Of a stretch of DNA of 64,000 bases, positions 3,123 through 45,011 are shown one piece after another. The translations under genes and the position numbers were made by a program. Where the stretch lies: positions 62,682,001 through 62,746,000 of the forward strand of contig CM059430.1 in the NCBI GenBank assembly GCA_030390025.1. Direction: 5' to 3'. The notes beneath the pieces were generated by a model, which ran no database searches, had not been told where the DNA came from, and worked only from the letters and a program-made list of their open reading frames with translations. This stretch comes from Squalus acanthias. Taxonomy: Eukaryota. Each line of letters opens with the position of its first letter. The first letter of the stretch is position 1.

Positions 3123-3164
3123 CAGCTCCTCACGCCAGTTCGGTCCCTTTACGGCAATGTTTCC
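3123..3164 (-). CDS. Gene A cytoplasmic exon 1, with in-frame stop at 3130-3132
   Basis: Acceptor gcttcacag|GG, donor CTG|GTACAT. 42 nt vs 44 nt in gene B, so the frame shifts to GKHCRKGTELA*. Confidence 0.65.
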
Positions 3165-6100
3165 CTGTGAAGCAATGAAATTTAATCATAATGAATGATT
3201 GAAATATTTACAGAATTTGCATGTCAATGCTTGCAAAGACCTTTCTAGAGTCGCTATAATGCCGAACATGGTTTTCAGATTCAGATTGTGCTGTTAGTGT
3301 TTGAAATCTCACTGCAGCCACCAGGAATGTTGTAAAACCATTCCGGGTCGGTGTCTCACACCTATTCAAAATACGTTCCATTCATCATGCTGCGAAATGG
3401 AAATTTCTGTTGCAAATATCCAGATAATCAGATCCTTTTAATTTAAATTCTGCGAGTATTTCTGCGTTTTAAAGAGCTGAATCTGTTGCTGTTTGGAACA
3501 ATCAGCGCTCCCTGAAATCAGATAGCACTGCCTTCAACTTTAAGTCATAATTTAAATCTCCATCCTCTGCGCTACTCGGAAACACTCACTCCCCCGTCCC
3601 CCGGAGCTCGCTGAAGTATTGTATGAAAATCAAATGCTTACAATAGATCTTACCTTTATTAATCTGCAACTGGCAGTGCATCCCAATGATGATCAGGAGC
3701 AGCAGGAACGCTAATCCATCAACCGCATATCTAAAACCCGAGTAGTAAGGGCACATACCGACGCTATCTGCAAGAATAATAGGAGCAAATATATTAAGTT
3801 GTACATAGTGGCGAGTGTTTGGTAAACGAGGCCACAGCAGAGTTCATTCGTTGAACTATTGATGTTTTTAGTAACCCCTTAGTATCCAACAGCAATAAGG
3901 ATGTTTTAATTAAAAAACTGTTATTCATTTTTAGATGTAATATTGGGAGGGACTTATGCACCTAATGGATAAGACAATTATGGCATTAACTGCGAAGAGC
4001 GATTGGTGCAGGAGAGGTAATATACGAGCGGAATGTTTCCCTGGAACGAATGGCTTGTTCTTATCGTAAACTTTTCTTATGTTCTTTACTTACTGTCTGA
4101 TGTAATCACAGGCAATTCGGGAACAATTGTTTCGCCGTTCCCTGTACAAAATGTCGAATTGCAGAAATCGTTTAAAACCCCCAGTTCACACGTCTATACT
4201 TCATTGAAGTAAGAATGTCACTGAATAGTGAAGGAGATGGTTTATTAATTATTCTCTGCCCAGTTTAGCAGTTCTTAATAAAATGATGTAACCTGCTGAA
4301 AAGCAGTCAGACAGTAAGAACAGTTTAAATTAAATGTATGAGACAGATCCCACTTCAGACCGCTGCGCCAAGATTAGAAGTAGGCCAAAGTGTTAATTTC
4401 AGAACTCTTCATTCAGAATCCGCAAAAAGCGGATCAGGATCGGGAACTGCATTGGGAGAAATCCGAGAGCAGACAACTTGATCGTAGCTCCTGGTAATCG
4501 TCCAGATGAAGCAAAACCAGATAATGGTAAGGAATAAACATTTTAACATGGAAATAAAACAAAGAGTAACAATCAGCAAAATATGAAATATAATCGGATA
4601 ACAAAGATGAGCCTCATGTTTATATGTGTTATGTATCAAATACAGGAACTTGAAGGCTTAATAATGTTTTACTGAGAATGTTTGTAAGGCAGACGATATA
4701 CCCGGTTTTACAACACATTGGTTTCCTCTAATCATTCAAACATGGATTTTATGTGTTCGTTTATATTCCCATGAGTTGTCCGTGTACTCCAGCAACCATT
4801 CAAAAAGACTTCCTTAATTTCACTCCCTTATGAAAAGATTTCCAAATTCTTTCGATTCAGGTGCCCACGGCTCCGACTTACATCCCCAAGAAAACCACAC
4901 TCCTTCCAATGCAGCAGTACAACCTCATACTCGCCATGCGCAAAGCCATGAGAAATAAGCATTATATATGGATTTCCAACGGTACAGTACATTTGAGCAT
5001 AGGCTATTCAATAACAAGAAGGTGACTCCGGGGGTTATAATATCATCAGTCTCCTGTGGTGTTGCTCTTCTTGAAATTGTATCTTTGCTCCTTTCCCACT
5101 TGCGAATTACTTTTGTGCCGCCCTCTCTATCTTTGTCTTACACCATTTTTTCTTCATCTTTCTATTTGTATGTTTGTCTTACACTTTATTCATTCTGCTG
5201 TCTGTAACGGTCTATGTAAATGTCTATGCAGCAATGTTTTGCATTTTGTCTGTTTCCCTTCTAATGAATTAAATCTCTATTATTTCTCTCCTTAGGTAGT
5301 TCCAAATGTTGTGTATTGGCTCCCACACAAGTTCCATTTTTAATATATTAAAAATCTATCTCTTCCCATTGTTTAAGTACTTCGGGATGTGGGAAGATGC
5401 AAGGCAACATGTACTAGGTGAAAGAGGCTTTTGGAGAGGTGATGCAAGATAGAGATTTGAGACAGAAAAAGGGATGGGGAGACTGTCTGACTGGAAGGGG
5501 TGTAGGCAGAGCTGTGGCCAGGACGAAACAATGGAATAGATTTCGATCATGAAAGTTGGAGGGGAAGGTAGTCTTGAACAGAATGGAAGAAGGTACGACC
5601 TAGGATTAATCATGTTGTCTTGTTTGGGACTGTTGGGATTTGGAAACTTGATGGGATTTTAGCGTGTGTTCTTGGTTGCTCGGCTTATCTTGCACTGGGG
5701 GGGGGGGGGGCGGTGGGCGGTGGGCGGGGGTAGAAGGCAATTGCGTAACTGAAATGTGAGACCTGGGAACACAGGAAATGAGCTTGTGTTTGGGAGTAAT
5801 TGACAGTGTAAAACCCCTCACAGTGAATCGCCCATCAGAGGCCGGACTCAGGAGCCCCAGTAGGAGACGCTCGAAACCATACAAACGAACTGCCGCTCTT
5901 GGTCCTGCAACGGATGTAAGGAACCAGATAAAGGGAAACAAATGAGTTTTGAGTAATCAGCAAGAAATGAAAATAATTGGATAAAAGAGGAACATCGCCT
6001 GATCATATTTGTTTTAACAATTGGAAGCTGATGAGGTTTAACAGGCAGTTACTGGGTGGAGGACGATAATAATCATTCGGCTTTACTATGGTTAAGTGTC

Positions 6101-7970
6101 AACAAGATTGTACATTGAAACATTAATTTTCTCTTTGCTTTGATATTTCCTGGGAGTTTATTTTTAAACAATCTTTATGATTATCAATATGAATAAACTA
6201 TATGAAGTACCCTTTTCAGAATATAACTGCAGCTGACCTCACCTGTTCCATTCGTAATTGGGTCGCAATTGTTAACTGTGTAGCTGGCAATGGCGGGTAT
6301 CTGAAGGGAGGCATGAGATACCAAACAGATGTAAACATCCCCGTTAGGCACAGACTGCGTCTCTTCAAAAGGGCTGGAAACTTCATACAGTCCCTCAGTG
6401 TTCTGCCGTTTAGTGTCATTTATCCCAGTTGCGGTTTCGACGCCATTTTTATACCAAACGAGGGTTAAATCGCCCGGGTAAAACTCAGCCGTTTCACACA
6501 CAAGAATCAGAAACGCAGATGAAATGCTCTCCGGTGTCCTGGGGGAAATCTTCAATGGAGTTGGGGCAGCTGTCGAACAGAGAATGTAGAAAATCAGGTT
6601 ACTGGGGAGATATTAAGCATAAGATATGGAAGAACAATGGTATCCTCAGTCGCTCTCTGTTTGTTTGTCACTCTGGGTCTGTCTGTCTGACTCCCCAAGA
6701 GAGCCGTGTTTATGGCGGGAGCGGTGCATTATTAGAAAAGATTTTCAGCCAGTCATCAATATATTTGGAATTTGTTCCGCAACTTCCATCTTCAGAAGTC
6801 TGATGCAAAAATTACATTTTGAGATGAATAGTGTAACATGTTAACTTGTTAGTAACTTTAATATTGCTGGAATTTTACACAACTCAGCAAATGAAGCGTC
6901 ATATTATGCCGTATAATTAGTAGTTGTGTGCAGAGTTTCACTGTAAATGTAGTAATATATTGTTTTATAATATCAAAGACGGTGCAATAAAACAATGACA
7001 AAACATCATCATTGTTACATTTGGAAATTCCCGCTCTCTCCGGTCACTTACCGCTCACAGTTAGATGTGATCCTGTTCCTTTTCCAATAATTCTTCCCTG
7101 ACGGATCACTGCGCACTGATACACTCCAGAGTCCCGATAGTCGCGCTCAGTAACTCAAATAAACCGTCTCCATTATCTTTCAGAGTAAATCTTTTTCTGC
7201 TATCGGCTACTCTTTGCAGATATTCATTCTCACCCTCTTTCTTCCAATGCACTTCTATCCCTGAATTGCGAAGGGACCCTGGGACTACGCAGTGGAAGGT
7301 GATGTTTGTCCCCATTAATATCGCTACTTTTCTGGGATTTTGAGGCACGCTGATCGAAGAGTTCGGAAATTCCCGCTCTCTCCGGTCACTTACCGTTCAC
7401 AGTTAGATGTGATCCTGCTCCTTTTCCAATAATTCTTCCCTGACGGATCACTGCGCAGTGATACATTCCAGTGTCCCGGATAGTCGCGGTCAGTAACTCA
7501 AATAAAGCGTCTCCATTATCTTTCAGAGTAAATCTATTTCTGCTATCGGCTCCTCTTTGCAGATATTCATTCTCACCCTCTTTCTTCCAATGCACTTCTA
7601 TCTCTGAATTGCGAAGGGACCCTGGGACTACGCAGTGGAAGGTGATGTTTGTCCCCCTTAATATACGTACTTTTCTGGGAGTTTGAGACACGCTGATCGA
7701 AGAGTTCGCAGCAGCTGTTGGAAAATATATTCAAAGTTTGCTTAATTGTTTTCTATGCGGAACCAAACACTTTAAAATGCATTTCTACATGGAAATGAAA
7801 AAGCGTTAAAAGAATACAGACCGACTAATTATATTTCATTCAATTTGTGTGGTAACTATTTCAGGTATGTTTTTAATTAAGACAGATCGATTTGAGAATA
7901 AACAGGTACCTGTGAAAATGATCCCTGGGAGAGACAGGAACAGGAAAAGAAACATCACAGTCGACAACAT
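3130..7970 (-). CDS. Gene A: V-C1-TM IgSF receptor with short tail (candidate activating or decoy form). Spliced CDS join(7910-7970, 7394-7714, 6243-6569, 3654-3767, 3130-3164), 285 aa
   Basis: All introns are GT-AG and phase 1, giving one open frame: signal peptide MLSTVMFLFLFLSLPGIIFTA, V domain, C1 domain, TM exon, then GKHCRKGTELA*. Exon for exon paralogous to gene B. Confidence 0.75.
3654..3767 (-). CDS. Gene A transmembrane exon: DSVGMCPYYSGFRYAVDGLAFLLLLIIIGMHCQLQINK
   Basis: Acceptor tattcttgcag|AT, donor AAAG|GTAAGA, 114 nt, phase 1-1. Same length as 41801-41914. Confidence 0.8.
4399..4490 (-). CDS. Gene A candidate alternative terminal exon (hydrophobic, GPI-signal-like): GATIKLSALGFLPMQFPILIRFLRILNEEF*
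   Basis: Acceptor ttaccag|GA, phase 1. Same 92-nt length and stop position as paralog 42578-42669. Minus-strand AATAAA at 4241-4246. Confidence 0.45.
6243..6569 (-). CDS. Gene A exon 3, Ig C1-set domain plus hinge
   Basis: Acceptor ctctgttcgacag|CTG, donor ACAG|GTGAGG. C1 motifs LVC..EFYPGDLTLVWYKNG and YICLVSHASL; extra Cys in NNCDP. Confidence 0.9.
7052..7364 (-). pseudogene. Orphan second V exon (V-psi) in gene A intron 2
   Basis: Direct tandem repeat 7023-7364 / 7365-7707. Keeps the GTAAGT donor but lacks the splice acceptor, and has a 1-nt deletion near 7135 (gtcccgatag vs gtcccggatag) that frameshifts before DSGVYQC. Confidence 0.85.
7394..7714 (-). CDS. Gene A exon 2, Ig V-set domain with germline-joined J-like strand
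   Basis: Acceptor ttttccaacag|CTG, donor AACG|GTAAGT, 321 nt. Motifs ITFHC...VHWKK...DTGMYHC...GKGAGSHLTV. Confidence 0.9.
7910..7970 (-). CDS. Gene A exon 1, signal peptide
   Basis: ATG at 7970, hydrophobic 20 codons, donor ACAG|GTACCT (phase 1). Nearly identical to 44951-45011. Confidence 0.85.
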
Positions 7971-8039
7971 TCCGAGCAAAAGATTCAACTGATCACTGAC
8001 TGCACAGACCGTGTGTTTGCCACTGAAAGAAGGGTTTGC

Positions 8040-8160
8040 TGATTATTTAAACCGAAATGCTTCGTAATGACGTTTGACATCCTGTGTCTGTGGGTTAAAA
8101 ATGGGTTTCGTTTGTGAAGTGAAATTTGATGACCGTTCTGCTCTTAGGCAGCCATTGGGA
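8040..8160 (-). promoter_or_regulatory. Putative proximal promoter of gene A (paralog ~45080-45200)
   Basis: CCAAT 8154-8158, IRF-like GAAGTGAAA ~8116-8124, CRE half-site TGACG ~8068, TATA-like TTTAAATAA ~8044-8052. All retained upstream of gene B, but the motifs are short. Confidence 0.35.
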
Positions 8161-8937
8161 TCAGCTGTGTCACGGTCAACAAAGGCTTTGGAAAAAAAAA
8201 ATCCGAATTCCAAATAGAGAATTTACCACCGATCGCTGAGCCAGTGTTGGTTTCTCCCAAATGAAGATGTCGAATGTGCACATTCCTTGTAGTGAATCTC
8301 GTGAGGCAAATATTCTTACACTTCCCTTAGGCTGGACGCTGCTGTTAACGTCACACAATAGACTACAGACGTCAAAGCGGGACAAACTGGGAACATTTAT
8401 AAATTGTTAATAATTAGTTCTTAAATAACAGTAGCAATATTTTATGATAAATACTGAAGGTGAGAAAATGACTGATTAACACAGCAGTTGTGTATAGAGA
8501 CTGTTCTACTATAATTCCAAGCATTGCTGCACATTTCACGTGATACTGGTGAGCTCCCATTCATTGTGATGTGTTATATCTCGGGAGACCTGATGCTATT
8601 CCGAACACAGTGACCTGAATCAGAACCGTCAATGATAACGATGGGGTTTATTTTCACCTTAAAATAACCTTATTGAATATTTAGGAAATAGAGCTTTGAT
8701 GATTCCTTCAGAGAGCTGCCGATGTGTGTTTGAGGTCAGGGCTTCTTTGCAAATGCAGTTTCCTGCTATCAGCGCGTCCTGCATAAAATGTTTGGAGGGA
8801 AATGTTGGTAGCCACGATGAAACTGTGCAAATTGGTTTGATAGCGGATATATTCGCTAGATTTTTTAAAAGGGCGTCTAGTGAGCTTCCAGGTCAAGAGC
8901 TTAATGGCCAAAAATATGTTCCGTAAGGTGAAGGGTA

Positions 8938-9677
8938 CCCAGAAATTAAACACGGAGCGTTCCTGCCGGGGTAAGGCTTCCCCGCGATATCTCACTGCGC
9001 GCCTACCTTTTCCCTCCGGGCTCACACGAACTTTAGTTTCAAGGCTGCAGCTGTGCAGTGCTTGCGTGAGCCAGAGACGCAGTTAGTTCGTGCGAGCTCT
9101 GGGATCACGTGATTCAGTTAGAGCCAATGGCAGCACACCATCTTTCATTCATAGTTTTGACAGGAAGACCTGTCAAAGCTATGAATCTATACCACCCCAA
9201 AAGAACAGCTAAACCTCAATTAATTTTTTTTAAAGCCATCACATTAATAAAATAAGTATAGTTAAATAAATTAACCACTTTAAACAAAAAATAAAAATTT
9301 TGAAAAAATGTAAAATCTTTTTATAAGTTATAAAAATAAACTTACCTTTCTTTAAAGTCTCTAAAAAAGATAAATCTGTTGAAAAAAATTTAAAATAATA
9401 CTTAATTAACTACTTACCTTGTTAAAAGAGGGTCTTACGCCTCCTTTCTTTATGTGCAAAATCTTCCATGCTTACCTGCGCGTTCAAAGCACTAAGTGCA
9501 CTGCGTGCGTGCAGCCTGTAGCGCGCACCCGGTTAACTTAGGAACCGCCCCCTTTTGAATTCACGAAGTGCCGGTTTCCCGCGCATGCGCAGTGCATGCT
9601 GGAAACCGGCAATTGAAGACCTAAAATGCAAGAGTACACAGTGCGTACTCTCGCGTATTAGGTCTAATTTTCGGGCC
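8938..9677. mobile_element. MITE-like TIR element ~1 kb upstream of gene A
   Basis: Ends cccagaaatt...aattttcgggcc. Empty site in the paralog at ~45965 (aagggtaatattctt). Confidence 0.85.
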
Positions 9678-9929
9678 AATATTTTTCTCATTCGAGTGCA
9701 TGGGAGTCTTCGTAGTTATTTGAAGTGTCTCCTAAAGCGTTCTCACATTGCAGCTGTCAACGGACGCCGCACTTAGAAAGTGTAGGTAAGGCTTTGTGCG
9801 TAGTACAGTATGCCACAAATTATTACCTACAATTTTTGATTGATTTATACAATCACACACCCTTCAGTTTATCTGATGTTTGTGGTCAAGTGTGGAGAGT
9901 AGCGAATGTTTCCAATCAAAACCAGAACA

Positions 9930-12900
9930 TACGAACACAAGAACATAAGAAATAGAAGCAGGAGTAGGCCATACGGTCCCTCGAGCCTGCTCCGCCATTC
10001 AATAAGATCATGGTTGATCATTGACCCCAACTCCACTTTCCCGCCCGATCGCCATATCACTTGATTCACTTGGAGTCCAATCATCTCTCTATCTCAGCCT
10101 TAAATATGATCAAAGACTCAGCATCCACAGTCCTCTGAGGCAGAGAATTCCAAAGATTCACAAACCTTTGAGTGAAGAAATCTCGGTCTTAAGTGGCCTA
10201 CCTCTTATCCTGAGACTATGCCCCATAGTTATAGACACTCGTGCCAGGGGAAACAACCTCTCAGCATCTACCCTAAATATCCCCTTCAGAATCTGTATGT
10301 TTCAATGAGATCACCTTTCATTCTTCTAAACTCCAAAGAGTATAGGCCCATTCTACACAATCTCGCATCATAGGACAGCCCTCTCACTACAGGAATCAAT
10401 CCAGTGAACCTTTGTTGAACTGCCTCCAAGGCAAGTATATCCTTCCATAGATAAAGAAACCAAAACTGTGCACAATACTCCAGGTGTGGTCTCACCAAGG
10501 CCCAATACAATTGTAGCAAGACATTCTTACTCTTATACACCAACCCACTTGCAATAAAGGCCAACCGGCCATTTGCCTTCCTTATTGCTTGCTGTACCTG
10601 CATGCTAGCTTTCTGTATTTTTTGAACGAGGTCACACAAATCTCTCTGAACACCAACATTTAAAAGTTTCTCATGTTAAAAAATATTTTGTTTTTCTATT
10701 CTTCCTACCAAAGTGAATAACCTCACATTTCCCTACATTATACTCCATCTGCCACCTTGCTGCCCACTCACTTAGTCTACCTATATCACTTTGCATACTG
10801 TTTGTGTTCTCCTCACAGCTTACTGTCCAACCTAGCTTTGGATCATCAGCAAGCTTGGATACATTACACTCAGTCTATTCATCTAGGTCATTAATCTAGA
10901 TTGTAAATGGCTCAGGCCCCAGCTGTGATCCTTGAGGCACCCCGTTAGTTACAGCCTGCCAACCTTAAATCGTGTATCCCTACTCTCTGCTTTCTGTCCA
11001 TTAACCAGTCCTCGATCCATGCTACTCTATTACCCCAAACCCCATGAGCCCTTATCTTGTGTAATAACCTTTTATGTGTCACCTTACCGAATAACTTTTG
11101 GAAATCCAAATATACTACATCCGCACGTTCCCCTTTATCTACCCTGCTAGTTACATCCTCAAAAGACTCTAATAAATTTGTGAAACTCGATTTTCCTTTA
11201 ATAAAACCATGTTGACTCTGCCGAATCATGTTATGATTTTCTAAGTGACTTGATACCATTTCCTGGACAATGGATTCCAGCATTTTCCCGATGACTAATG
11301 TCATGCTAACTGGCCTATAGTTTCCTGTTTTCTCTCTCCCTCTTTTCTTGAACAACGGTGTTACATTTGCTACCTTCCAATCCGCTGGGACCATTCTCGA
11401 ATCTATACTATTTTGGAAGATCAAAACCAATGCATCCACTATCCCACAGCTAACACTTTTAGAACCCTAGGATGTAGGCCGTCAGGTCCTGGGGATTTGT
11501 CAGCTATTACTCCCATTAGTTTCAGGAGTACTTTTTCTCTACTTATATTAATTATGTTAAGTTCCTCACCTTCATTCTACCCTTGCTTTCCCACCATATT
11601 TGGTATTCTTTTTGTGTATTCTACTGTGAAGACAGACACAAAATATTTGTTTAACGTTTCTGCCATTTCCTTGTATAATAATTTCTCCTGTCTCAGCCTC
11701 TCAGGGACCAACGTCGACTTTTGCGACTCTATTCCTTTTTACATACTTGTAGAAGCTCTTACAGTCTGTTTTCCTATTTCTTGCTAATTTTCTGTCATAT
11801 TCAATTTTTTCCCTTTTCATCAATGTTGTGTTCATCCTATGCTGGTTTCTGAAATTCACCGAATCCTCAGGCTTACTAGTTTTCTTTAGAACATTACATA
11901 GAAACATAGAAACATAGATGATAGGAGCAGGAGTAGGCCATTAGGCCGCTCGAGGCTGATCCGCTATTTAATGAGATCATGGCTGATCATCCAACGTCAG
12001 TACCCTGTCCCTGCTTTCCCCCAATATCCCTTGATCCCTTTAGCCTTAAGAAATATATCTAACTCCTTCTTGAATATATTTAATGAATTGGCCTCAACTG
12101 CCTTCTGTGGTAGAGAATTCTACAGTTTCTACACTCCCTGGGTGAAGAAATTCCTCCTCATCTCAGTCTTAAATGGCTTACACCTTATTCTTAGACTGTG
12201 ACCCCTGGTTCTAGACTCCCCCGCCATCGGGAACATCCTTCCAGCATCTAGTCTGTCTAGTCCTGTTAGAATTTTATAAATTTCAAGTTTCAAGCTTTTT
12301 CTTTCAATCTAATGCTATCCTTAACTTCTTCAGTTAGTCACGGCTGGAACACTTTTCTCGTGGAGTTTGTGTTTCGCAATGGAATGTATTTTTGTTCAGA
12401 ATTATGAAATATTTCTTAAAATGATAGCCACTGCTTAGCTACTGCCATACCTTTTAATCTGTTTTTCCAATCTACCTTAGCCAACTCGCCCCTCATACCT
12501 ACATAATTGGCTTCATTTAAGTTTAAGACTCTTGTTTCAGACTGAGCAATTCACTCTCAAACTTAATGCGAAAAAAACTGGTTTTTACTTTTTTAAACGC
12601 TTATGCTGGTAAAAGAAGGCCTTACACCTGCATGAACCAGGCGTAAGATTTTTAAAGGTTTTCAGCAGGCAGAGTTTGTGCAGAAAGCAAAACTCCCTGC
12701 CTGCACAGGCCCTTTTTCCCGGGCAGGCGGAGGATCTGTCAAGAGACTTCTGTGCATGTGCTTCACCTGCCTGAAACTGGAACTTGTGAAGCCCCTACGG
12801 GTGTGTACACAGCTCGTACGCATCCGCAGCGATCGGAAAATACGGGACAATGTGAAATTCTATCATATTATGATCACTCTGCCCCAGAGGATCCTTTACT

Positions 12901-15606: not shown

Positions 15607-16540
15607 GCCCAGCTGCTTCATTAATGATCTTTCTTCCAACATAAAGTCAGAATTGGGGATGTTCGCTGATGACTGCACAGTGTTCAGTGCCATCACAACT
15701 CCTCAGATAATGAAACAGTCCATACCCGTATGCAACAAGAGCTGGACGTCGTCCAGGCTTGGGCAGATAAGTGGCAGTTAAAATTCGCGTCACAGAACAG
15801 CCAGGCAATGACTATCTCCAACAAGCGAGAGCCTAACCACTGCCCCTTGACTTTCAACGGCATTACCGTCGCCGAATTCCCGACCATCAACATCCTGAGC
15901 GTCACCATTGACCAGAAACGTAACTGGGCCAGCCACAAATATACTGTGGCGACAAGAGCAGGCTAGAGGCTAGGTATTCTGCGCCGAGTGTCTCACCTCC
16001 TAACTACACAAAGCCATCTACAAGGCACAAGTAAGGAGTGTGATGGAATGCTCCCCATCTGCCTGGATGAGTGCAGCTCCAACAACACTCCAGGACAAAG
16101 CAGCCAGCTTGATTGGCAACCCATCCACCATATTAAATATCCACTCCCTCCACCACCAGCGTACCGTGGCTGCAGTGTGTACCATCTACAAGATGCACTG
16201 CAGCAACTCGCCACGGCTTCTTCAGAAGCGCCTCCCAATCCCGCGACCTCTTCCACCTAGAAGGACAAGGGCAGCAGGCGCATGGGAACACCACCAGCTC
16301 CAAGTTCCCCTCCAAGTTACACACTGTCCTGACTTAGAAGTCTATCGCCGATCCTTCATCGTCGCTTGGTCAAAATCCTGGAAGTCCCTCCCTAACAACA
16401 CTGTGGGAGTACCTTCACCACACGGACTGCAGCGGTTCAAGAAGGCAGCTCACCACCAGCTTCTCAAGTGCAATTAGGGATAGGCAATGAATGCTGGCCT
16501 TGCAAGCGACGCCCAAATCCCACAAAAACGTATGAAAAAA
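15607..16540 (+). mobile_element. 3' fragment of LINE family 2
   Basis: FADDCTV region through the 3' UTR and A-rich tail. Confidence 0.85.
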
Positions 16541-30413: not shown

Positions 30414-30419
30414 TTTATT
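30414..30419 (-). terminator. Poly(A) signal AATAAA, gene B
   Basis: About 320 nt after the stop. Conserved at 1871-1876 in the paralog. Confidence 0.5.
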
Positions 30420-36900: not shown

Positions 36901-39900
36901 TCAGCTGAAAGCCCAAGAATGGCTTGTATCGGATGGCACATGTGGCATGATATTGATTTGTTATGTATGAAGCAATTACCATCCGGAAATGCATGGTGAA
37001 TCCGCACTGAAGAACGGATCTCAGACATGCTCAGTTACTTGACAACAGCACAACATGAAATGGTTAATGTGGCTCAGGAGAGTGAGACAACGTTTAAAGC
37101 ACTGACACATACTCCATCGAGAAAATAGCTAAGTAATGAATAAATCAAAATAGAGTTAAACATACTGGTACCTGTTAGAGGGATTGAAATTGAAGTTGAA
37201 GCAAAGAATTACACGGAATGTTGATTGGGACAATTGAAGCGAGGGAGAAATCATACTTAGCAAGAATTATCCACAAGATGGATACGGGTAAAAGAGATCT
37301 GGAGAATCTTTTAAATCCATGGCTTGTTGATTCGATGTTAAACTGTAGTGTCGCTTATAATGATTGTAAGACTGAATTTAACTGTGACTGTAATAATTGT
37401 GTTTTGTAGGTAACAGAGTGTGGGAAAAACCAGTACGAATCCAGTATGAGGTGGTTTTGGTGGTGCCTCCTGTGTCACTACTACCGCAACTAGCATGCTT
37501 TGTCGGTCTAACAGGACCTGTCCAATTAATAGCCCCAGTTTCTGCTTCACACCACATCTACCAACAACCATCAACCAACACGTTTTACTCAGTATCAAAA
37601 CCTATGCTCAACTGAAACTGACAGTAAATGAGACACTTAAGTATGAGCTGCATAATTCGGGCATGACATTCCCCTGTTGTCTAACGGCTTCAGTGAACTT
37701 GTGATGTTACTGAACTCCTCCCTCAAGCATCTTTATGTTTTGGGGCAAGACAACTCGAGAATAGATATTGAAATTGACAGCATAGGGGAAGATTCGCACT
37801 GGTGGGATATTGGGCTTAATATATCAGCATACCCTATGTTCGTATTATTTCACACACTCTGGTAGATCTCCAACTTGTATTGATAGTGTATTTGATAGAT
37901 GTAACCTGTGTAGTAAGACTTTGATGCACAAGCCAATTGTGTACACATGCTTATGACTAACCAGCACGAAGAAATTAATTGAGCACACTGAAAGAGAAGA
38001 TCCGGAGCAACGTAGAGGAGACCGCAGGCGGGGTAAGATCAGGAAAGATAGAAGAAAAAGAGGATTCCCCAGGCGGGGCAGAATTGGAACACCGGAACAG
38101 TGCACTGAACCTGTGTGAAGGGTCGGAAGTTGCTCCTCCGCCTCAAAAGAATGGGCCGTAAGGAAGGGGTTAATCTTCATTTCTGAGTCTCCCTACTAAC
38201 TATTGCCCAAGATGAGAAAGCAATAAGCAAATTTACGAACTACCAGTGGTGGAAACTAATTTATAATGCCAGCTAGCACGCTGGGCACGAATGTTATCAG
38301 CGGGCCCATAACTTAGAAGGAGCTAGATTAGTCAAAAGAGGGTTGTGCGAAGTCAATAGGATATTTCCTTCTCAAGGTGGGGAGTTGTAAGAAATCATGA
38401 ATTGGAAAACATAACTTGAGACAAAAAATTCTCTTCAGACGGGTGTTATAATAACTGGATAGACGGAATTTGCTTAGTTTTTGGTTCCCTGTGGAATTTA
38501 TAACATTCTGCACCGTGCTGGTGACTTTATTTCTAGACTAGCTGTCTGCTGTTTGTGTGCTAGAAAGGTTGTTGACTGTATCTTTGATAATCTACACTGG
38601 GCACACACCTAAAAAGAGAGTAAAAGAGATATCTAAAGAGCTTTTAGCACAGATGGTGAAGAGAAGGGAAGAGCTGTTCGCGCACGCCAGCCGTATGTCC
38701 GATCGGGACCGATACCAGCTGCTTGTCACGGTCGTATGTCTACTATGTCTATCTTGATTGCGTGTTGTACTTACCTTAAACTGTCACTCCTTAATAAAAT
38801 GCATTACAACACCTAAGACCCTTTGGGTAATCTGTGTGTGACCTGTTATCCAAATCTTACAGTAGATAAGGGGGAAGCGGTGAATGTAGTGTATTTGAAT
38901 TTACAAAACACATTCGATAAGGTGCCACACAAGACGTTATTACACAAAATTAGGGCTCATGGGATTGGAGGTAATGTATTAGCGTCGATTGAGGATTGGT
39001 TAACGGACAGAAAACACACAGTAGGAATAAATGGGTAGTTTCGGGTATAACTAGTGGGGTATCTCAGGGATCATTGTTTAGGCCTCAGCTATTTTCAATC
39101 TATATCAATGACCTAGATGAGGGGACCAAGTGTAAGTTATTCAAGTTTGCTTATGATACAAATCTCCATGGGACAGTATGTCGTGAGGAGGACGCAAAGA
39201 GGCTACATGGGGATATAGGCAGGTTAAGTGAGTGGGCTAGTACATGGCAGATGGAATATAACGTGCAGAAATGTGAAGTTATCAACTTTGGTAGGAAAAA
39301 TAGAAAAGCAGAATATTTTTTAAATATTGACAGATTGGAAAATGTTGGTATTCGGAGGGACCAGGGTCTCCTTATACACGAATCATAGAAAGTCAACATG
39401 CAGGTATAGCAAGCAATTAGGAAAACAAATGGTATATTAGCCTTAATTACGAAAGGATTGGTGTATAAGAGGAAAGACGTCTTACTGTAGTTATGTATGA
39501 TCTTGGTGAGACCACACCTGGAGTATTCCTTTTCTGAGGAAGGATATATTTGCCTTAGAGGGAGTGTAACGAAGGTTCACTAGACTAATTCCTGGGATGG
39601 GTTGGTTGTCCTAGGAGGAGAGATTTAGTAGACTAGACCTTTATTCGCTACAGTTTAGAAGAATGAGAGGTGATCTCATTGAAATGTCTAAAATTTTGAA
39701 GTGGCTTGGCAGGGTAGATGCTGGGAGTCTGTTTCCTCCTGCTGGGGAGTCTAGAGCTCGGGTTCACAGTCTCAGAATAAGGGTTCGGTCATTTAGGACT
39801 GAGATGAGAAGAAATTTCTTCACTCAAAGTGTTGTGAATCTTTGGAATTCTACATCCCAGAGGGCTGTGAATGCTCAGTCGGTGAGAATATGGCAGACAG

Positions 39901-42900
39901 ACATGGATAGACTTTTGGATACTAAGGGAACCAAGGAAATAGGGACAGTGCGGGTACGTGGATTCGAGGTAGAAGATCAGCCATAATCCTATTCAATGGT
40001 GGAGCAGGTTCGGAGGGCCGAATGGATTACTCCTGCAACCATTTCTTATGTTCTTATGATTCTATAAACAGTTATTACCCAGGTACTTTTTCAACGAAAC
40101 AACCAGTTTCTTCTCTGCCATTGAACAATTTTTTCAGTAACGCACCGGGTGCCAAGTACATTTCTAACATTGGCCCAGAAATTTGACTCGGAGGCTTGCC
40201 GCAGGGGTAAGGATCCCCCGCGATATCACACTCCGCGCCGGCCGTTGAGTTTCGGGCCCACAGGAACTTCGGGTCCTGGGCCTCTCCCCGGCGCGCAGTG
40301 TGCGCGTGTCCCAGAGATGCAATTATTGCGATGCGACCTCTGGGATCACGTGGGCCATGGAGAGCCAATGGCAGCAGACTATCTTTCATTCATAGATTTG
40401 ACAGGAGACCTGTCAAATTTATGAATACAAATTGCACCCAAAAGAACAGCTAAACCTCAAATAATTTTTTTAAAAACCATCACATTAATAAAATAACTAT
40501 AGTTAAATAAATTAACTACTTGAAACAAAAATTTAAATTTTTGAAAAATTTAAATTCATTTTAAAGGTTATAAAAATAAACTTACCTTTCTTTAAAGTCT
40601 CTAAATAAGATAAACCTGTTGAAAAAAATTATTATACTTAATTAACTACTTACCTTGTTAAAAGGGCGTCTTACGCCTCCTTTTTTCATGTGTAAATTCT
40701 TCCATACTTCCCCTCGCGTTGAAACCTGAAAAAAAAACTCGTTGTGTGCTGCGTGCGCACAGCCTGAAGTGCGCACGCGGTTCACCTAGGAACCGCCCCA
40801 CACGCCATACCGGAAGTGCCGTTTTCCCGCGCATGCGCAGTGCATGCAGGAAACCGGCACTTCGGGATCGAATACGGGTGAGTACACAGTGCGTGCTCTC
40901 CCGTATTAGGCCGAATTTTGGGCCTATGATTTGAATGACTCACTAAGACCGGACAAATACATTTAGTCATTAGACGTAAATTGTTCTGACGTGACTATGA
41001 TATAATCTTTCCATTATAGCAATCTTTCTTGACATTTCAATCGCCTACTGGGATGGATGAATGAACGTACCAGCTCTTGAGGGCGGTTCGGTCCCCTTAC
41101 ACATTCTTCTTTACCTGGAAACGATTGAAATTTAAAGATATTGAAAGATTGCAACATTTACTCAGTTTCAATGTCAGTGATTGCAAAAACATTTCTAGAG
41201 TCAGACAAAGCCGAACATGATTTCCAATTCCGGATTGTGCCGATAGTGCTTGAAATCCCAGCACTTGTAGCGATCAGCAATGGTGGATTTTTTTGATATT
41301 TCTCGGAAACTAAGGGAATCTTTGTGGGCATTAGGGGATCAGGCGATATGGGGATAGGGCGGGAAAGTGGTGTTGAGGTAGAGGATCAGCATGGCGGAAT
41401 AGGCTCAAGGGCAGTACGGTCTAACACTGCTCCTATTTATTATGTTCTTATGTGTACAACCAATCCCCGGCCGGATCCTCACACTCCTTCACTCAAATTA
41501 GTTGCGCATCCATAACAGAATGGGTTGGAAAGTGATTGTGTGTCAGGGTACATGTCATTTATTATGCTGCAAAGGGGGCACTTCTGTTGCAAACATACAA
41601 ATAATTATTTCAATTTTTATTACGATTCTTTGAGCAATTCAGCGTTTTAAAATGTATTTAGAACAATCCGTGCTCCCTGAAACAGATAACACTGTTTTCA
41701 TCTTTAAGTCCTAATCGAGTTCTGCTTCCCCAATGTTACCGGAGACTGTCATTAACCCGCAGGTTTTGTAATAAAATAAAGGGCCTACAGTTGATCTTAC
41801 CTTCATTCTTCTGCAGTCGCCACCGCGTCCCAATGAAAATCACGAGCACCAGAAACGCCAATCCACCCACCGCACACCCAGGAGCCCAGATATAAAGTGA
41901 ATTATCGGCACTACCTGTAAGATTAATAGGAACATTAAGTTATGGTGGGCGTTGGCTAAGAATAGGCCTCAAGATAGATTGAGTTAAACTATGATGTTTC
42001 TTTCAGTAACTCCGCGGTATAGAACGGCAATAAGAAAGATTAAATACAAAATGTTATTTCTTTTAGATATCATCTTTAAGGTAACTTCTTCGTCGAATGG
42101 ATGAGACATTCGGGATTAATCCGCACAACACACTACCGGTTTACGGATCTCACAACACTGTTTTAGGAGAGTTAGAATACGAGAGAGATCAATTTCCCAT
42201 GACCAAAAGACTTGTTCTTGACGTTTCTTATTTATTAACATATAGTTTGAGGAAATTGGAGGCAAATGCGTCACAAGAGTTTTTTCTTTGCCGGCACAAA
42301 ATTCTGGGTTGCTGCAATCGGTTAAGAATCCCCTTTCAATTACCTGACCTTTGTTTTTTACAGTAAGAAGGTCACTGAATAGTAAGGGCTATCAACGGGC
42401 AATGGTTCATTGATTATTGCCCTTCGGGGCAAAGAGTTCTTCACAATATGACGTATCGAACCGGTTGAACTGTCGCCAGGTTGCGGGCACAGGTTAAATG
42501 AGATTTATGAGACAGATTCCAATTAAACCCGTTATGACATGGACGGGTGAGGGGTAAAAGCTGGCCAGGGGTTAATTTCAGATCTCTACAGTAGAATTAG
42601 CCGATAGGGGGATGAGGATCAGGAACTGCATTGGAAGAAGCCCAAGTGCAAACAGCGTGACTGCTGCTCCTGGTAACAGTCTTGGTACAAGGACAGCAGG
42701 CAATGGTAAAGAATAAAACGATCTTAAAATTGAAACAAAATAAATTGAATAAGTATTCATAATAAACAGGTGAGGAAATATAATCGGATAGAAGTGATAA
42801 ACTCTTGTTTATAATTGTTATAAATTAATAAAAGGAATATGACATAAAATAATGTTTGACAGAATATGTGTGTGGCTGGATGTGGGGTCGGCAGAGCTGT

Positions 42901-45011
42901 GGCCAGGAGGTACCAATGGAATGGATCTCGACCATGAAAGTTAGAGGGGGATGTAAGCTTGAACAGAATGGGAGAAGGTAAGATCTCGGATTAATCATGT
43001 TGTCGTGTGTGAGAGTACTGGAATTTGGGAAGAGAATGGAATTTTAGTGTGTGTGTTCTTGGTTGCTCGGATTATCCAGCACCGGGGGGTAGAAGGCCAT
43101 TTCGTAACTGAAATGCGAGACCTGGGAACACAGGAAATGAGCTGGTGTTTGGGAACAATGACGGTGTAAAAGCCCTCACCGTGAATCGCCCATCAGAGGC
43201 GGGATTCAGAGACGCTCGAGACCAGACAAACGAACGGTCGCTTCTAGTCCTGCAACTCATGTAAAGAACCAGGAAATGGGAAAAATGAATTCAGTATAAC
43301 AAAAGCAAACGGTTGATTCTTTAGTAATAAGCAAGAAATGTAAAATAATTGCATAGAAGAGATAAACAGCCTGCACGTATTTGTTTTAACAATTGGTAGC
43401 TGATGAGGTTTAATAGGCAGTTACTGGGTGAAGGGCGATAATAATCCTTCGGTTTCACAACGGGTCCGGGTCAACAATATTTTACATTGAAACATTAATT
43501 TTCTCTTTGCTTTGCTGTTTCCTGGACGTATTTTCAAAATAAATTCATGATTATCAATATGAACAAACTTTATGAAATACCCTTTCAGAAGATAACAGTA
43601 GCTGACCTCACTTCTTGGCCTGATGCCTTCGTACCTGGGTCGCAATTGATAACTGTGTAGATGGCAATGGCGGGAGTCCGAAGGGAGGCATGAGATACCA
43701 AACAGATGTAAACAGCCCCGTTCGGCACAGGCTGCGTCTCTTCAAAAGGGCTGGAAACTTCATACAGTCCCTCAGTGTTCTGCCGTTTAGTGTCATTTAT
43801 CCCAGTTGCGGTTTCGACGCCATTTTTATACCAAACGAGGGTTAAATCGCCCGGGTAAAACTCAGCTGTTTCACACACAAGAATCAGAAAGGCAGAAGAA
43901 TTTCTCTCGGGTATCCTGGGGGAAATCTTCAATGGAGTTGGGGCAGCTGCGGAACAGAGAATGTAGAAAATCAGGTTACTGGGGCGATATTAAACATAAG
44001 ATATGGAAGAACAATGGTATCCTCAGTCGCTCTCTGTTTGTTTGTAACTCTGGGTCTGTCTGTCTGTCTCCCCAAGAGAGCCGTGTTTTTGGCGGGAGCG
44101 GTGCATTAATAGAAAAGATATTCAGCCAGTCATCAATATATTTGGAATTTGTTCCGCAACTTCCACCTTCAGAAGTCTGATGTAAAAATTACGTTTTGAG
44201 ATGAATCGAGTAACATGTTACTTAATCTGGTTAATATTGCTGGAATTTTTCACAACTCAGCAAATGAAGCGTCATGTTATGCCATATAATTAGTAGTTGT
44301 GTGCAGAGTTTCAATGTAAATGTAGTAATATAATTGTTTTATAATATCAAAGACGGTGCAATAAAACATTGACAAAACATCATCCTTGTTACATTTGATA
44401 CATTTGGAAATTCCCGCTCTCTCCGGTCACTTACCGTTCACAGTTAGATGTGATCCTGCTCCTTTTCCAATAATTCTTCCCTGACGGATCACTGCGCAGT
44501 GATACATTCCAGTGTCCCGGATAGTCGCGTTCAGTAACTCAAATAAAGCGTCTCCATTATCTTTCAGAGTAAATCTATTTCTGCTATCGGCTCCTCTTTG
44601 CAGATATTCATTCTCACCCTCTTTCTTCCAATGCACTTCTATCTCTGAATTGCGAAGGGACCCTGGGACTACGCAGTGGAAGGTGATGTTTGTCCCCCTT
44701 AATATACGTACTTTTCTGGGAGTTTGAGACACGCTGATCGAAGAGTTCGCAGCAGCTGTTGGAAAATATATTCAAAGTTTGCTTAATTGTATTCTATGCG
44801 GAACCAAACACTTTAAAATGCATTTCTACATGGAAATGAAAAAGCGTTAAAAGAATACAGACCGACTAATTATATTTCATTCAATTTCTGTGGTAACTAC
44901 ATCAGGTATGTTTTTTATTAAGACAGCTCGATTTGAGAATAAACAGGTACCTGTGAAAATGATCCCCGGGAGAGACAGGAACAGGAAAAGAAACATCACA
45001 GTCGACAACAT
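30741..45011 (-). CDS. Gene B: V-C1-TM IgSF receptor with ITIM/ITSM-like tail (inhibitory type, SIRP-like organisation). Spliced CDS join(44951-45011, 44435-44755, 43635-43946, 41801-41914, 41071-41114, 30741-30914), 341 aa
   Basis: Six exons, all GT-AG, phases 1,1,1,1,0, summing to 1026 nt with no internal stop. Confidence 0.85.
31866..32965 (+). mobile_element. RT fragment of LINE family 2
   Basis: ORF 31866-32579, DAQFGFR...FDIKAAYD. Confidence 0.85.
33052..38861 (+). mobile_element. Degenerate env-bearing LTR retroelement / ERV in gene B last intron
   Basis: 3' LTR 38386-38861 (TGTAAGA...TCTTACA) after PPT aaggtggggag. Partial 5' LTR 33052-~33413. PBS-like ttgtgtcagaattggaat 33416-33433 (resembles tRNA-Leu PBS). 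Gag CCHC CNLCQRLGHYARQC, RT start NSLVWSVRKPGDYRMTIDY, env-like Cys-rich fragments at 37.0-37.9 kb. Confidence 0.8.
38862..40060 (+). mobile_element. CR1 RT / 3' portion; a 5' part is probably at 31500-31865
   Basis: VVYLNLQNTFDKVPH, SQGSLFRPQLF, MRGDLIE, tail ttcttatgttcttatg. Confidence 0.85.
40172..40924. mobile_element. MITE-like TIR element in gene B last intron
   Basis: ggcccagaaattt...aattttgggcc, same internal motifs as the other copies. Confidence 0.85.
41071..41114 (-). CDS. Gene B cytoplasmic exon 1: GKEECVRGPNRPQEL
   Basis: Acceptor gtttccag|GT, donor CTG|GTACGT, 44 nt, phase 1 in and phase 0 out, matching the next exon. Confidence 0.75.
41801..41914 (-). CDS. Gene B transmembrane exon: GSADNSLYIWAPGCAVGGLAFLVLVIFIGTRWRLQKNE
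   Basis: Acceptor aatcttacag|GT, donor GAAG|GTAAGA. Uncharged hydrophobic span followed by the basic stop-transfer RWR. Confidence 0.88.
42578..42669 (-). CDS. Gene B candidate alternative terminal exon (GPI-signal-like): GAAVTLFALGLLPMQFLILIPLSANSTVEI*
   Basis: Acceptor ttaccag|GA, phase 1, 92 nt, hydrophobic. Minus-strand AATAAA at 42231-42236. Confidence 0.5.
43635..43946 (-). CDS. Gene B exon 3, C1-set domain
   Basis: Acceptor ctctgttccgcag|CTG. Phase-1 donor CCAG|GTACGA at 43635; the GTGAGG at 43611 would be phase 0. FYP and YICLVSH motifs. Confidence 0.85.
44435..44755 (-). CDS. Gene B exon 2, V-set (VJ-type) domain
   Basis: Same splice sites as gene A V. One substitution (ACC>AAC, T>N) relative to 7394-7714. 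Confidence 0.9.
44951..45011 (-). CDS. Gene B exon 1, signal peptide
   Basis: ATG at 45011, MLSTVMFLFLFLSLPGIIFT, donor ACAG|GTACCT. Confidence 0.85.

What the first reader, a model, noticed from the sequence alone, without database searches (positions are those of the whole stretch)
3130..45011. Candidate paired inhibitory/activating receptor system with near-identical ligand-binding domains
Seen: two tandem V-C1-TM genes whose V exons differ at 1 of 321 nt. Gene B has a neutral TM and a tail with LTYAAI and TEYAQL. Gene A has Arg/Asp at the TM and a tail ending GKHCRKGTELA* with no tyrosine. The ORF track shows only disconnected pieces, and gene B's ITIM exon lies 10 kb from the rest. Established: shared ectodomain with ITIM tail versus charged TM and short tail defines paired receptors (SIRPa/b, LILR, KIR, Siglec-5/14, teleost NITRs). 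Inference: this is such a pair in a V-C1 family, probably in a shark. I cannot tell from sequence whether it has been described.
Basis: partly seen in the sequence, partly recalled or inferred. Interest (0 to 1): 0.9.

Follow-up and report, generated by a model that had tools for sequence, protein, structure and literature searches.

The report
Shark-type paired V-C1 immune receptor genes
Two neighbouring immune-receptor genes of a cartilaginous fish carry almost the same outer binding domain, but one has an inhibitory signalling tail and the other a short tail with a charged membrane anchor, a known "paired receptor" design seen here in a gene family that no paper I found describes.

Summary
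Two minus-strand genes, A (7970-3130) and B (45011-30741), each encode leader, germline-joined VJ-type V domain, one C1 domain and a transmembrane (TM) segment. Their V exons differ at 1 of 321 nt.

B has a neutral TM and a long tail.

A has Arg at the TM edge and Asp four residues on. A 2-nt deletion gives the stop after GKHCRKGTELA, and A's downstream tail exons are decayed.

The V identity comes from a recent sequence exchange (2 mismatches in 480 nt). The tract ends at a tandem V duplication that orphaned A's own frameshifted V exon.

A is chimeric. Its 5' half is B-like. Its TM exon matches a short-tailed Scyliorhinus protein (22 of 27 residues) better than it matches B.

The family runs through sharks, rays and chimaeras under automatic "SIRP-like" names. 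Arg-TM members lack ITIMs.

Not shown: transcription of A (RNA contigs came from paralogues), adaptor binding, phosphatase recruitment. A may be a decoy or pseudogene.

This is a new member of a known kind. The scan noted similar genes just beyond this window.

The parts
7910..7970 (-). Gene A leader exon (ATG at 7970; ends in phase 1)
   Evidence: 60 of 61 nt identical to B. An RNA contig of a paralogue shows the splice 7910|7714.
7394..7714 (-). Gene A V exon, VJ-type (ends GKGAGSHLTVN), 321 nt
   Evidence: Pfam V-set 8.6e-9. 320 of 321 nt identical to B.
7365..7846 (-). Recent exchange tract shared with B (B about 44406-44887): 2 mismatches in about 480 nt. It ends at the V/V' duplication junction.
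   Evidence: mismatch map. Poisson P = 1.4e-10 against 6% background.
7052..7372 (-). V' pseudo-exon: tandem copy of the V exon lacking the acceptor and first 8 nt, with a 1-nt deletion that leads to a stop
   Evidence: 7020-7365 versus 7362-7708, 94.8% identical; the ORF ends ...ATIGTLECISAQ*; 299 of 320 aligned nt identical to either V.
6243..6569 (-). Gene A C1 exon (327 nt; donor ACAG|GTGAGG, 15 nt beyond B's, frame kept)
   Evidence: Pfam C1-set 7.3e-12. 296 of 312 shared nt identical to B.
3654..3767 (-). Gene A TM exon: ...GFRYAVDGLAFLLLLIIIGMHC... (Arg at the TM edge, Asp four residues on)
   Evidence: Best match is S. canicula P0010, 22 of 27 residues, score 106 versus at most 82 for all others. 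Only 77 of 114 nt identical to B.
3123..3164 (-). Gene A first cytoplasmic exon, 2 nt shorter than B's. Reads GKHCRKGTELA then TGA at 3132-3130, 9 nt before the donor.
2365..2464 (-). Gene A decayed homologue of B's middle tail exon: acceptor AG>GG, donor GT>CC, in-frame stops, 1-nt deletion, Tyr>Phe
   Evidence: Coordinates are approximate, read off alignment A3.
2061..2156 (-). Gene A homologue of B's last exon: 18-nt deletion removes the LTYAAI motif. It still reads ...NRVTYSSVM* in B's frame but cannot be reached after the 2-nt deletion.
44951..45011 (-). Gene B leader exon
44435..44755 (-). Gene B V exon (VJ-type)
   Evidence: Pfam V-set 9.3e-10.
43635..43946 (-). Gene B C1 exon (312 nt, donor CCAG|GTACGA)
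   Evidence: Pfam C1-set 2e-10.
41801..41914 (-). Gene B TM exon, uncharged core: ...APGCAVGGLAFLVLVIFIGTRWRLQKNE
   Evidence: Best match is the Heptranchias ITIM-tailed P0175.
41071..41114 (-). Gene B first cytoplasmic exon: GKEECVRGPNRPQEL
31226..41070 (-). Gene B 9.8-kb intron filled with retroelement fragments
   Evidence: RVT_1 in ORFs 31866-32579 and 38996-39388; homology to A is interrupted here.
31124..31225 (-).
   Evidence: tblastn hits by Heptranchias P0164, P0165 and P0177, 64-77% identity. DNA.
30741..30914 (-). Gene B last exon: TEQGTARDKLTYAAIALTGSEKTGKYKNNERSTEYAQLKTKKQRGVKEAVYTEARIN*
   Evidence: 77% identical to Heptranchias P0175 over 56 aa.
2143..22373 (.). Unit A of a tandem segmental duplication (unit B = 30901-58566; offsets between collinear blocks 28.8-38.2 kb, about 37 kb at the V exons)
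   Evidence: collinear blocks at 82-94% identity upstream of and through C1, but 64-72% from the TM exon onward.

Best explanation
A and B are tandem duplicates in a multigene family of non-rearranging VJ-C1 receptors of cartilaginous fish. Genome annotators have named members of this family 'SIRP-alpha-like', 'SIRP-beta-like' or 'tapasin-related-like'.

B is the inhibitory form. It has a neutral TM and a tail of about 106 residues carrying VHYAAL, TVYAQ, LTYAAI and TEYAQL. After tyrosine phosphorylation this tail would recruit SH2 phosphatases (inferred).

A is the counter-form and is a chimera. Its promoter, leader, V and C1 are B-like, and the V exon was refreshed very recently by non-allelic exchange. 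Its TM exon belongs to an older 'Arg-at-the-TM-edge, short-tail' lineage. Its tail is cut to 11 residues after the TM exon and its former ITIM exons have decayed.

By design A would bind what B binds and either signal through an ITAM adaptor with a TM Asp (inferred: the FcR-gamma / CD3-zeta type, because the Arg lies near the outer leaflet) or at least not inhibit.

Shown: gene structure, motifs, mosaic identity, family-wide link between Arg-TM and loss of ITIMs. Inferred: expression of A, adaptor pairing, opposite signalling.
For: Structure:
- All exons of A up to the stop and all seven exons of B are open, with AG/GT sites and matching phases.
- A's C1 donor moved 15 nt yet keeps the frame.

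Three strata of A-B identity:
- V tract: 2 mismatches in 480 nt.
- 5' flank, intron 2, C1 and start of intron 3: 83-95%. The blocks further upstream are 82-91%.
- TM to tail: 54-79%.

TM lineages:
- A's TM exon matches S. canicula P0010 in 22 of 27 residues. P0010 is a 287-aa model that ends 5 residues after the TM.
- A and B TM exon peptides share only 16 of 37 residues.
- B's TM and tail are closest to Heptranchias ITIM-tailed proteins.

Family pattern:
- 0 of 8 proteins with Arg directly before the Cys/Tyr at the TM start carry an ITIM-like motif; their tails are 5-39 aa.
- By a mechanical rule applied to 71 TM-bearing family proteins, 7 of 25 with a basic residue at the TM start have a motif, against 35 of 46 without (Fisher p = 1.2e-4). 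Isoforms and orthologues are not independent.
- On V and C1 trees the Arg-type rows sit in at least four places, each beside ITIM-type rows.
- A ray Arg-type protein (P0029) and an ITIM-type protein of another genus (P0171) are 83% identical over 276 aa, and most alike in the V domain.

Tail: B's tyrosine motifs align with those of relatives from Callorhinchus to rays.

Decay: A's downstream tail exons are decayed, with lost splice sites, stops and an ITIM deletion. The short tail is therefore old and does not rest on one base call.
Against: - No transcript of A was seen. The only runs offered were three small contig sets. Their contigs over V', C1 and the leader fit neither A nor B: they carry 8 of B's 16 C1 differences plus 12 others. 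None covers A's TM or cytoplasmic exon.
- A's Asp four residues after the Arg is not found in any relative seen (Gly in the closest). It could neutralise the Arg in the helix.
- The Arg lies at the membrane edge, not in the core.
- The V identity extends into introns, so it is exchange and not proof of selection.
- C1 shows 9 amino-acid changes among 16 nt differences, so there is no clear purifying signal.
- A carries several scars: a dead V copy, a lost C1 donor and a frameshift.
- No adaptor gene was looked for.
- The 2-nt deletion could not be checked against reads.
Confidence: 0.6

Rival explanations
1. A is a non-signalling decoy (like SIRP-gamma) or a decaying pseudogene. It would be a truncated copy whose ectodomain merely looks intact because it was recently overwritten from B.
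For: - Frameshift and early stop in the first cytoplasmic exon.
- Dead V copy and lost C1 donor.
- An Asp beside the Arg that no relative seen shares.
- No A-specific RNA contig.
- The recent exchange tract explains the intact V without any need for selection.
- SIRP-gamma shows that short-tailed, adaptor-less members of such families exist (PMC12975943, passages read).
Against: - The TM exon lies outside the exchanged 5' half and is old (about 33% nt divergence from B). It is still open, keeps both splice sites, and is 22 of 27 identical to the TM of an annotated short-tailed S. canicula protein.
- The shifted C1 donor keeps the frame.
- Arg-TM short-tail forms recur in sharks and rays, and a chimaera protein (P0179) has Arg at the TM start with a 7-residue tail.
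Confidence: 0.3
2. A is a weakly inhibitory receptor and the 2-nt deletion is an assembly error. Read in B's frame, and with the dead middle exon skipped, A's tail would run into ...NRVTYSSVM*, which holds one ITIM-like motif.
For: A's last-exon homologue is open for 32 codons in B's frame and its acceptor is kept.
Against: - An open stretch of 32 codons is expected by chance about one time in five (own estimate, (61/64)^32).
- The first ITIM was removed by an 18-nt deletion.
- The middle exon lost both splice sites.
- Arg-type relatives also end early.
- No read evidence either way.
Confidence: 0.06
3. The pair is an assembly artefact: two haplotypes of one gene laid in tandem.
For: The V exons are near-identical.
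Against: - The units differ by 6-18% over 20 kb and by 25-39% in the TM and tail exons.
- They have different retroelement insertions and a different exon content.
- This is far beyond allelic difference.
Confidence: 0.02

Closest known systems
SIRP family (SIRP-alpha / SIRP-beta / SIRP-gamma)
   Same: - N-terminal V domain with a J-like end, followed by C1-set domain(s), TM and tail.
- An inhibitory member with several ITIM-type tyrosines, an activating member with a basic TM residue and short tail, and possibly a silent member (PMC12975943, passages read).
- A profile of the family aligns to SIRP-alpha across V plus the first C1 (2wng, 3.2e-29).
- Annotators name the relatives SIRP-like.
- From recall, not tested: SIRP-alpha's tail also holds LTYA- and TEYA-type motifs.
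   Different: - One C1 domain instead of two.
- Arg at the TM edge (plus Asp in A), rather than the positively charged TM residue that the review says lets SIRP-beta bind DAP12.
- By sequence IgA heavy chain, UrIg2 and Fab heavy chains score as well or better, so orthology to SIRP is not shown.
- CD47 binding is unknown.
UrIg / UrIg2 (non-rearranging VJ-C1 genes of elasmobranchs; Flajnik et al. 2025, PMC12227049)
   Same: - Germline-joined VJ exon, split leader, C1-type domains, TM, elasmobranch.
- UrIg2 is the second-best PDB match of the C1 exon (5.8e-11) and of the family profile (9.6e-34).
   Different: - Nurse shark UrIg2 has nine C domains and the epaulette shark model eleven (abstract and section 7 read). 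Here there is one.
- The paper's main text has no occurrence of 'ITIM', 'SIRP' or 'inhibitory'.
- Its supplements could not be seen.
Other paired Ig-like receptors homogenised by gene conversion (KIR, LILR/PIR, Siglec-5/14, CEACAM1/3; teleost NITR)
   Same: - Linked genes share an ectodomain, with an ITIM tail in one and a charged TM plus short tail in the other.
- The activating form is derived from an inhibitory one by truncation.
- There is 5' sequence exchange. The general pattern is from recall; CEACAM as paired receptors comes from the abstract of PMC5112662 in a search listing.
   Different: - Those families use C2/I-set or V-only ectodomains. From recall, NITRs lack a C1 domain and are known only from bony fish.
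- Here the ectodomain is VJ plus C1, like one chain of an antigen receptor.

Membership tests
Paired inhibitory/activating Ig receptors (functional class) | Linked genes with highly similar ectodomains | tested here: met
   V 320 of 321 nt identical. C1 296 of 312 nt identical, with 9 of 104 residues different. Tandem units about 37 kb apart.
Paired inhibitory/activating Ig receptors (functional class) | One member has cytoplasmic ITIM/ITSM motifs | tested here: met
   B has VHYAAL, LTYAAI and TEYAQL, plus TVYAQ(T). The motifs are conserved in position in relatives. This is motif-level evidence only.
Paired inhibitory/activating Ig receptors (functional class) | The partner has a short motif-less tail and a charged TM residue | tested here: met
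   A's tail has 11 residues after the TM exon and no Tyr. Arg lies at the TM edge, at the position shared by 8 of 8 strictly Arg-type relatives. Caveat: A has an extra Asp, and the Arg is at the edge rather than in the core.
Paired inhibitory/activating Ig receptors (functional class) | The partner associates with an ITAM adaptor and gives the opposite signal | not testable with these tools
   Needs co-expression and co-precipitation.
Paired inhibitory/activating Ig receptors (functional class) | Both genes are expressed | tested here: inconclusive
   Three small coded runs were available. Their spliced contigs come from paralogues, and none is assignable to A or B.
SIRP family | Ectodomain of one V-set and two C1-set domains | tested here: not met
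   There is one C1 exon between V and TM in both genes. No further Ig exon was hit by the 177 proteins then held. Relatives also have V plus one C1.
SIRP family | Specific sequence kinship with SIRP over other VJ-C1 proteins | tested here: inconclusive
   SIRP-alpha scores 3.2e-29 with the family profile but ranks behind IgA heavy chain, UrIg2 and a Fab heavy chain. The V exon alone matches SIRP-beta at only 0.049.
SIRP family | CD47 binding | not testable with these tools
   No ligand data.
UrIg / UrIg2 | VJ exon followed by many C domains | tested here: not met
   Single C1 exon here. Nurse shark UrIg2 has nine C domains (PMC12227049, section 7).
Rearranging antigen receptors (Ig/TCR) | V and J are separated in the germline by recombination signals | tested here: not met
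   The V exon runs unbroken through the J-like GKGAGSHLTV to the splice donor.
NITR (teleost novel immune-type receptors) | V, or V plus I-type domain, without a C1 domain (recalled definition) | tested here: not met
   A C1-set domain is present at 7e-12.

The most novel reading that the evidence does not exclude
The Arg-type members, gene A among them, are built like one chain of a T-cell receptor. They have a split leader, germline VJ, one C1 domain, a stalk cysteine (NNCDP / INCDP, which could make disulfide-linked dimers), a basic residue at the TM and a very short tail. The family could therefore be a surviving non-rearranging relative of the pre-RAG antigen receptor that already signalled through CD3/FcR-gamma-like adaptors, with ITIM-tailed twins as its brake. 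If so, the adaptor-coupled wiring of antigen receptors would be older than rearrangement.
Probability: 0.1. Interest if true: 0.8.

Novelty: new member of a known kind. Interest (0 to 1): 0.45.

Why it matters
Paired inhibitory and activating receptors are a recurring answer to pathogen pressure in mammals, birds, frogs and bony fish.

It also shows how such a pair is made and kept. Steps visible in one locus:
- a tandem duplication;
- an older Arg-type TM exon joined to a B-like 5' half;
- loss of the ITIM exons;
- a very recent exchange that replaced the V exon.

The family exists in public annotation only under misleading automatic names. A proper description would help comparative immunology and would give testable receptors for shark FcR-gamma, CD3-zeta and DAP12 biology.

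Tried and rejected
Ideas and steps that led nowhere:

- The open frame just after A's C1 exon (5941-5606, '...RLYGFERLLLGLL...') was considered as a TM exon. I rejected it because B has a stop there in the same phase and it is not hydrophobic.
- B's donor homologous to A's (GAA|GTGAGG at 43612) was rejected. It leaves phase 0 and the TM exon then hits a stop.
- UrIg/UrIg2 membership was rejected on domain number.
- SIRP orthology is not established.
- RNA test of gene A. The one run search listed only three small runs, said to be RNA by guess and kept as contigs, holding 0.00-0.02 of the sampled words. Laid at 90% likeness, their contigs show the leader-to-V and V-to-C1 splices at the predicted places, but with letters of paralogues. 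Nothing lay on A's TM or cytoplasmic exons.
- Two loose-end sequences that follow the C1 exon in those contigs were searched in the window with up to 3 mismatches: 0 matches each. Those downstream exons lie elsewhere.
- A's TM peptide against PDB sequences gave no match at E up to 10. A recalled likeness of 'AVDGL' to the FcR-gamma-binding TM motif of Fc receptors therefore stays an untested recollection.
No DNA of relatives could be had, so there is no dN/dS.
- Literature: six searches found no paper on this family. Subscription journals are not covered, and the supplements of PMC12227049 could not be seen.
- The species of the window was not identified. The best V match is 60% (Heterodontus P0002), and no protein of the window itself appeared.
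- The 'hidden GPI exon' note (42578-42669) was not tested.
- The spliced models were never joined for a search. V, C1 and TM exons were searched, folded into trees and compared one by one.
Full report
**What is there**

The window has no N. Its ORF list shows two minus-strand pairs of Ig-like frames, at 7386-7691 with 6184-6555 and at 44427-44732 with 43585-43932.

I read the DNA, translated the regions in three frames and aligned the 3' parts. Exon borders were then fixed by their AG/GT sites and phases.

Gene A exons:
- leader 7970-7910
- V 7714-7394
- C1 6569-6243
- TM 3767-3654
- first cytoplasmic exon 3164-3123, with TGA at 3132-3130

Gene B exons:
- leader 45011-44951
- V 44755-44435
- C1 43946-43635
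- TM 41914-41801
- cytoplasmic exons 41114-41071, 31225-31124 and 30914-30741

Pfam calls the exon translations V-set (8.6e-9 and 9.3e-10) and C1-set (7.3e-12 and 2e-10). The V exon runs through a J-like GKGAGSHLTV to its donor, so the genes do not rearrange.

**The observation**

The V exons differ at 1 of 321 nt (A 7489). This gives Thr in A and Asn in B, and makes an N-glycosylation sequon in B.

A's TM exon reads DSVGMCPYYSGFRYAVDGLAFLLLLIIIGMHCQLQINK. B's reads GSADNSLYIWAPGCAVGGLAFLVLVIFIGTRWRLQKNE.

A's first cytoplasmic exon is 42 nt against B's 44 nt. This shifts the frame into a stop 9 nt before the donor.

It encodes EAAAESVHYAALDLNRSRKTPRREIEAERTVYAQ, has AG/GT sites and goes from phase 0 to phase 0. 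B's tail therefore carries four tyrosine motifs, laid out as in Heptranchias proteins P0165 and P0175.
- B's C1 exon must end at CCAG|GTACGA. In A that site is TT, and A uses a donor 15 nt further on that keeps the frame.

The 9.8-kb intron of B holds reverse-transcriptase fragments.

**A mosaic history**

A and B sit in a tandem segmental duplication: 2143-22373 against 30901-58566, with about 37 kb between the V exons. Collinear blocks upstream of and through C1 are 82-94% identical.

Identity falls into three strata:

| Stratum | Region | A-B difference |
|---|---|---|
| 1 | A 7846-7365 (part of intron 1, the V exon, 29 nt of intron 2) | 2 mismatches in about 480 nt |
| 2 | 5' flank, intron 2, C1 exon, start of intron 3 | 83-95% identical |
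| 3 | TM exon to the end | 54-79% identical (TM exon 77 of 114 nt) |

The break between strata 2 and 3 lies in intron 3, near A 5484 and B 42870.

Stratum 1 ends exactly at the junction of a 343-nt tandem duplication in A. The second copy, V' (7372-7052), lacks the acceptor and the first 8 nt and has a 1-nt deletion followed by a stop. It is 299 of 320 aligned nt identical to either V, which is the background level.

So A's working V exon is a very recent copy exchanged with B, and A's own V was orphaned.

Because the tract includes intron sequence, the near-identity shows exchange. It is not by itself evidence of selection for a shared ligand.

**The family**

A phmmer search of B's V exon against 1.84 billion representatives gave 317 proteins at E up to 1e-3 and 75 at E up to 1e-10. 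The best single-V hit was P0002, 60% identical.

Sequences, names and further relatives show a chondrichthyan family with the layout leader-VJ-C1-TM-tail. It occurs in Callorhinchus, Heterodontus, Scyliorhinus, Mustelus, Heptranchias, Pristis, Hypanus, Hemitrygon, Mobula, Stegostoma, Chiloscyllium and Leucoraja.

The automatic names include 'tyrosine-protein phosphatase non-receptor type substrate 1-like', 'signal-regulatory protein beta-1-like', 'tapasin-related protein-like' and 'immunoglobulin lambda-1 light chain-like'.

No protein of the window itself turned up, and the species remains unknown.

A profile of 23 members against PDB sequences ranks as follows:
- IgA1 heavy chain, 5.3e-35
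- UrIg2, 9.6e-34
- a Fab heavy chain
- SIRP-alpha, 3.2e-29, aligned across V and the first C1

The family is thus antigen-receptor-like and SIRP-like, but orthology to SIRP is not shown. UrIg2 differs in having nine or more C domains (PMC12227049: abstract and section 7 read).

**Is the pairing a family trait?**

Eight proteins have Arg directly before the Cys or Tyr that opens the TM:
- P0010 and P0163 (S. canicula)
- P0162 (Mustelus)
- P0029, P0155 and P0157 (Hypanus isoforms)
- P0156 and P0030 (Hemitrygon)

All eight have tails of 5-39 residues, and 0 of 8 has an ITIM-like motif. ITIM-tailed members have Gly, Ala, Val or Ile at that position.

A mechanical count used 98 proteins that match B's C1 at 40% or more over at least 85 residues:
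- 27 have no TM or are truncated models.
- Of the other 71, 7 of 25 with Arg or Lys within -4 to +6 of the TM window have a motif.
- 35 of 46 without such a residue have a motif (Fisher p = 1.2e-4).

Isoforms and orthologues are not independent. Most of the seven exceptions have the basic residue outside the membrane.

On quick trees of the V and C1 domains (SH-aLRT support only), the Arg-type rows fall in at least four places, each next to ITIM-type rows. A and B pair with each other.

Hypanus P0029 (Arg-type) and Mobula P0171 (ITIM-type) are 83% identical over 276 residues and most alike in V.

A's Arg aligns with the family Arg.

A's TM exon is closest to P0010: score 106 against at most 82 for every other protein, and 22 of 27 core residues identical. 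P0010's V is only 48% identical to the window's and sits in another ectodomain clade. B's TM exon is closest to Heptranchias P0175.

A therefore joins a B-like ectodomain to an old Arg-type TM exon.

**A's tail is old news**

The homologue of B's middle exon in A has lost its acceptor (AG to GG) and donor (GT to CC). It also holds stops and a 1-nt deletion.

The homologue of the last exon lost LTYAAI through an 18-nt deletion.

So the short tail does not rest on the 2-nt deletion alone.

One caveat applies. Read in B's frame, the last exon still gives ...NRVTYSSVM*. If the 2-nt deletion were an assembly error, a tail with one ITIM-like motif would be possible.

**RNA**

The single run search listed three small runs of the same species label (120-130 million letters). 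They are RNA only by guess, are kept as contigs, and hold 0.00-0.02 of the sampled words.

Laid on 2030-8029 at 90% likeness, they gave 5, 6 and 11 pieces:
- One contig skips 7715-7909, which is the predicted intron 1.
- One joins 7052 to 6568, a V-type donor to the C1 acceptor.
- One joins the leader to a V'-like exon.

Their letters fit neither gene. In C1 they carry 8 of B's 16 differences plus 12 others. In V' they carry 12 letters that are neither V nor V'.

They stop matching A's C1 at 6262, four nt before the place that corresponds to B's donor, and run on into two different sequences that are absent from the window.

So the family is expressed and spliced as modelled, probably with alternative 3' exons. 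Transcription of A or B themselves is not shown, and nothing lay on A's TM or cytoplasmic exons.

**Mechanism and odds**

Most likely (0.6): B is an inhibitory receptor, and A is its activating-type or at least non-inhibitory counterpart, made by recombination and kept similar by exchange.

The Arg near the outer leaflet suggests an FcR-gamma / CD3-zeta-type adaptor. This rests on recalled knowledge of where such receptors carry their Arg and was not tested.

Evidence against:
- The Asp four residues after the Arg, which no relative seen shares.
- The scars in A.
- The missing RNA evidence.

These keep a decoy or pseudogene reading at about 0.3.

**Novelty**

Six literature searches found no description of this family. 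The main text of the UrIg2 paper has no occurrence of 'SIRP', 'ITIM' or 'inhibitory', and the shark MHC paper none of 'SIRP', 'ITIM' or 'paired'. Supplements were closed and subscription journals are not searched.

Gene models of relatives are public under automatic names.

The design is the well-known paired-receptor design (SIRP features from PMC12975943, passages read). I therefore file it as a new member of a known kind and score its interest as moderate.

The scan's own notes report similar VJ-C1 ITIM genes 10-23 kb beyond this window's end, and Arg-TM/ITIM conversions elsewhere in this genome. Those notes are unchecked.

Noticed in passing
window 22480-25416 (-): An intact 978-aa LINE ORF2 (endonuclease plus reverse transcriptase; RVT_1 1.9e-33, Exo_endo_phos 8e-14) lies between the two receptor genes. 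It may be a recently active element.
   Followed up: partly
window 16712-17262 and 53687-54162: Arrays of a 30-nt-like tandem repeat are open in several frames (for example ...WTRRLSKRSL...). They are present in both duplication units at 85-87% identity.
   Followed up: no
window 8938-9684; also 26517-27283, 40174-40932, 59620-60339: A repeat of about 750 nt occurs four times in the window at 80-83% identity. One copy sits in A's upstream region and is absent from the matching place in B.
   Followed up: no
window 6262 (C1 exon end), coded runs X1-X3: Paralogue transcripts leave the C1 exon near B's donor position and continue into two different downstream sequences that are not in this window. 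This suggests alternative 3' exons (TM versus another end) in the family.
   Followed up: partly
window 6259-6270 and 43636-43647 (-): Both genes end the C1 exon with a cysteine (NNCDP / INCDP). The closest shark relatives have NSC at the same place. This could form an interchain disulfide, as in TCR/Ig chains and UrIg2 dimers.
   Followed up: no
proteins P0029 (Hypanus sabinus) and P0171 (Mobula hypostoma): An Arg-TM short-tail protein and an ITIM-tail protein from two ray genera are 83% identical over 276 aa, with nearly identical V domains. The V domain is unusually conserved across genera.
   Followed up: partly
window 63116-63526 (-): An ORF with an RNase H domain (1.7e-6), probably part of an LTR or retroviral-type element near the window's end.
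   Followed up: no
window 4685-5484: About 800 nt in A's intron 3 has no counterpart in B. It sits exactly at the border between the 83-95% stratum and the 64-72% stratum, so it is the likely recombination breakpoint or an insertion there.
   Followed up: no
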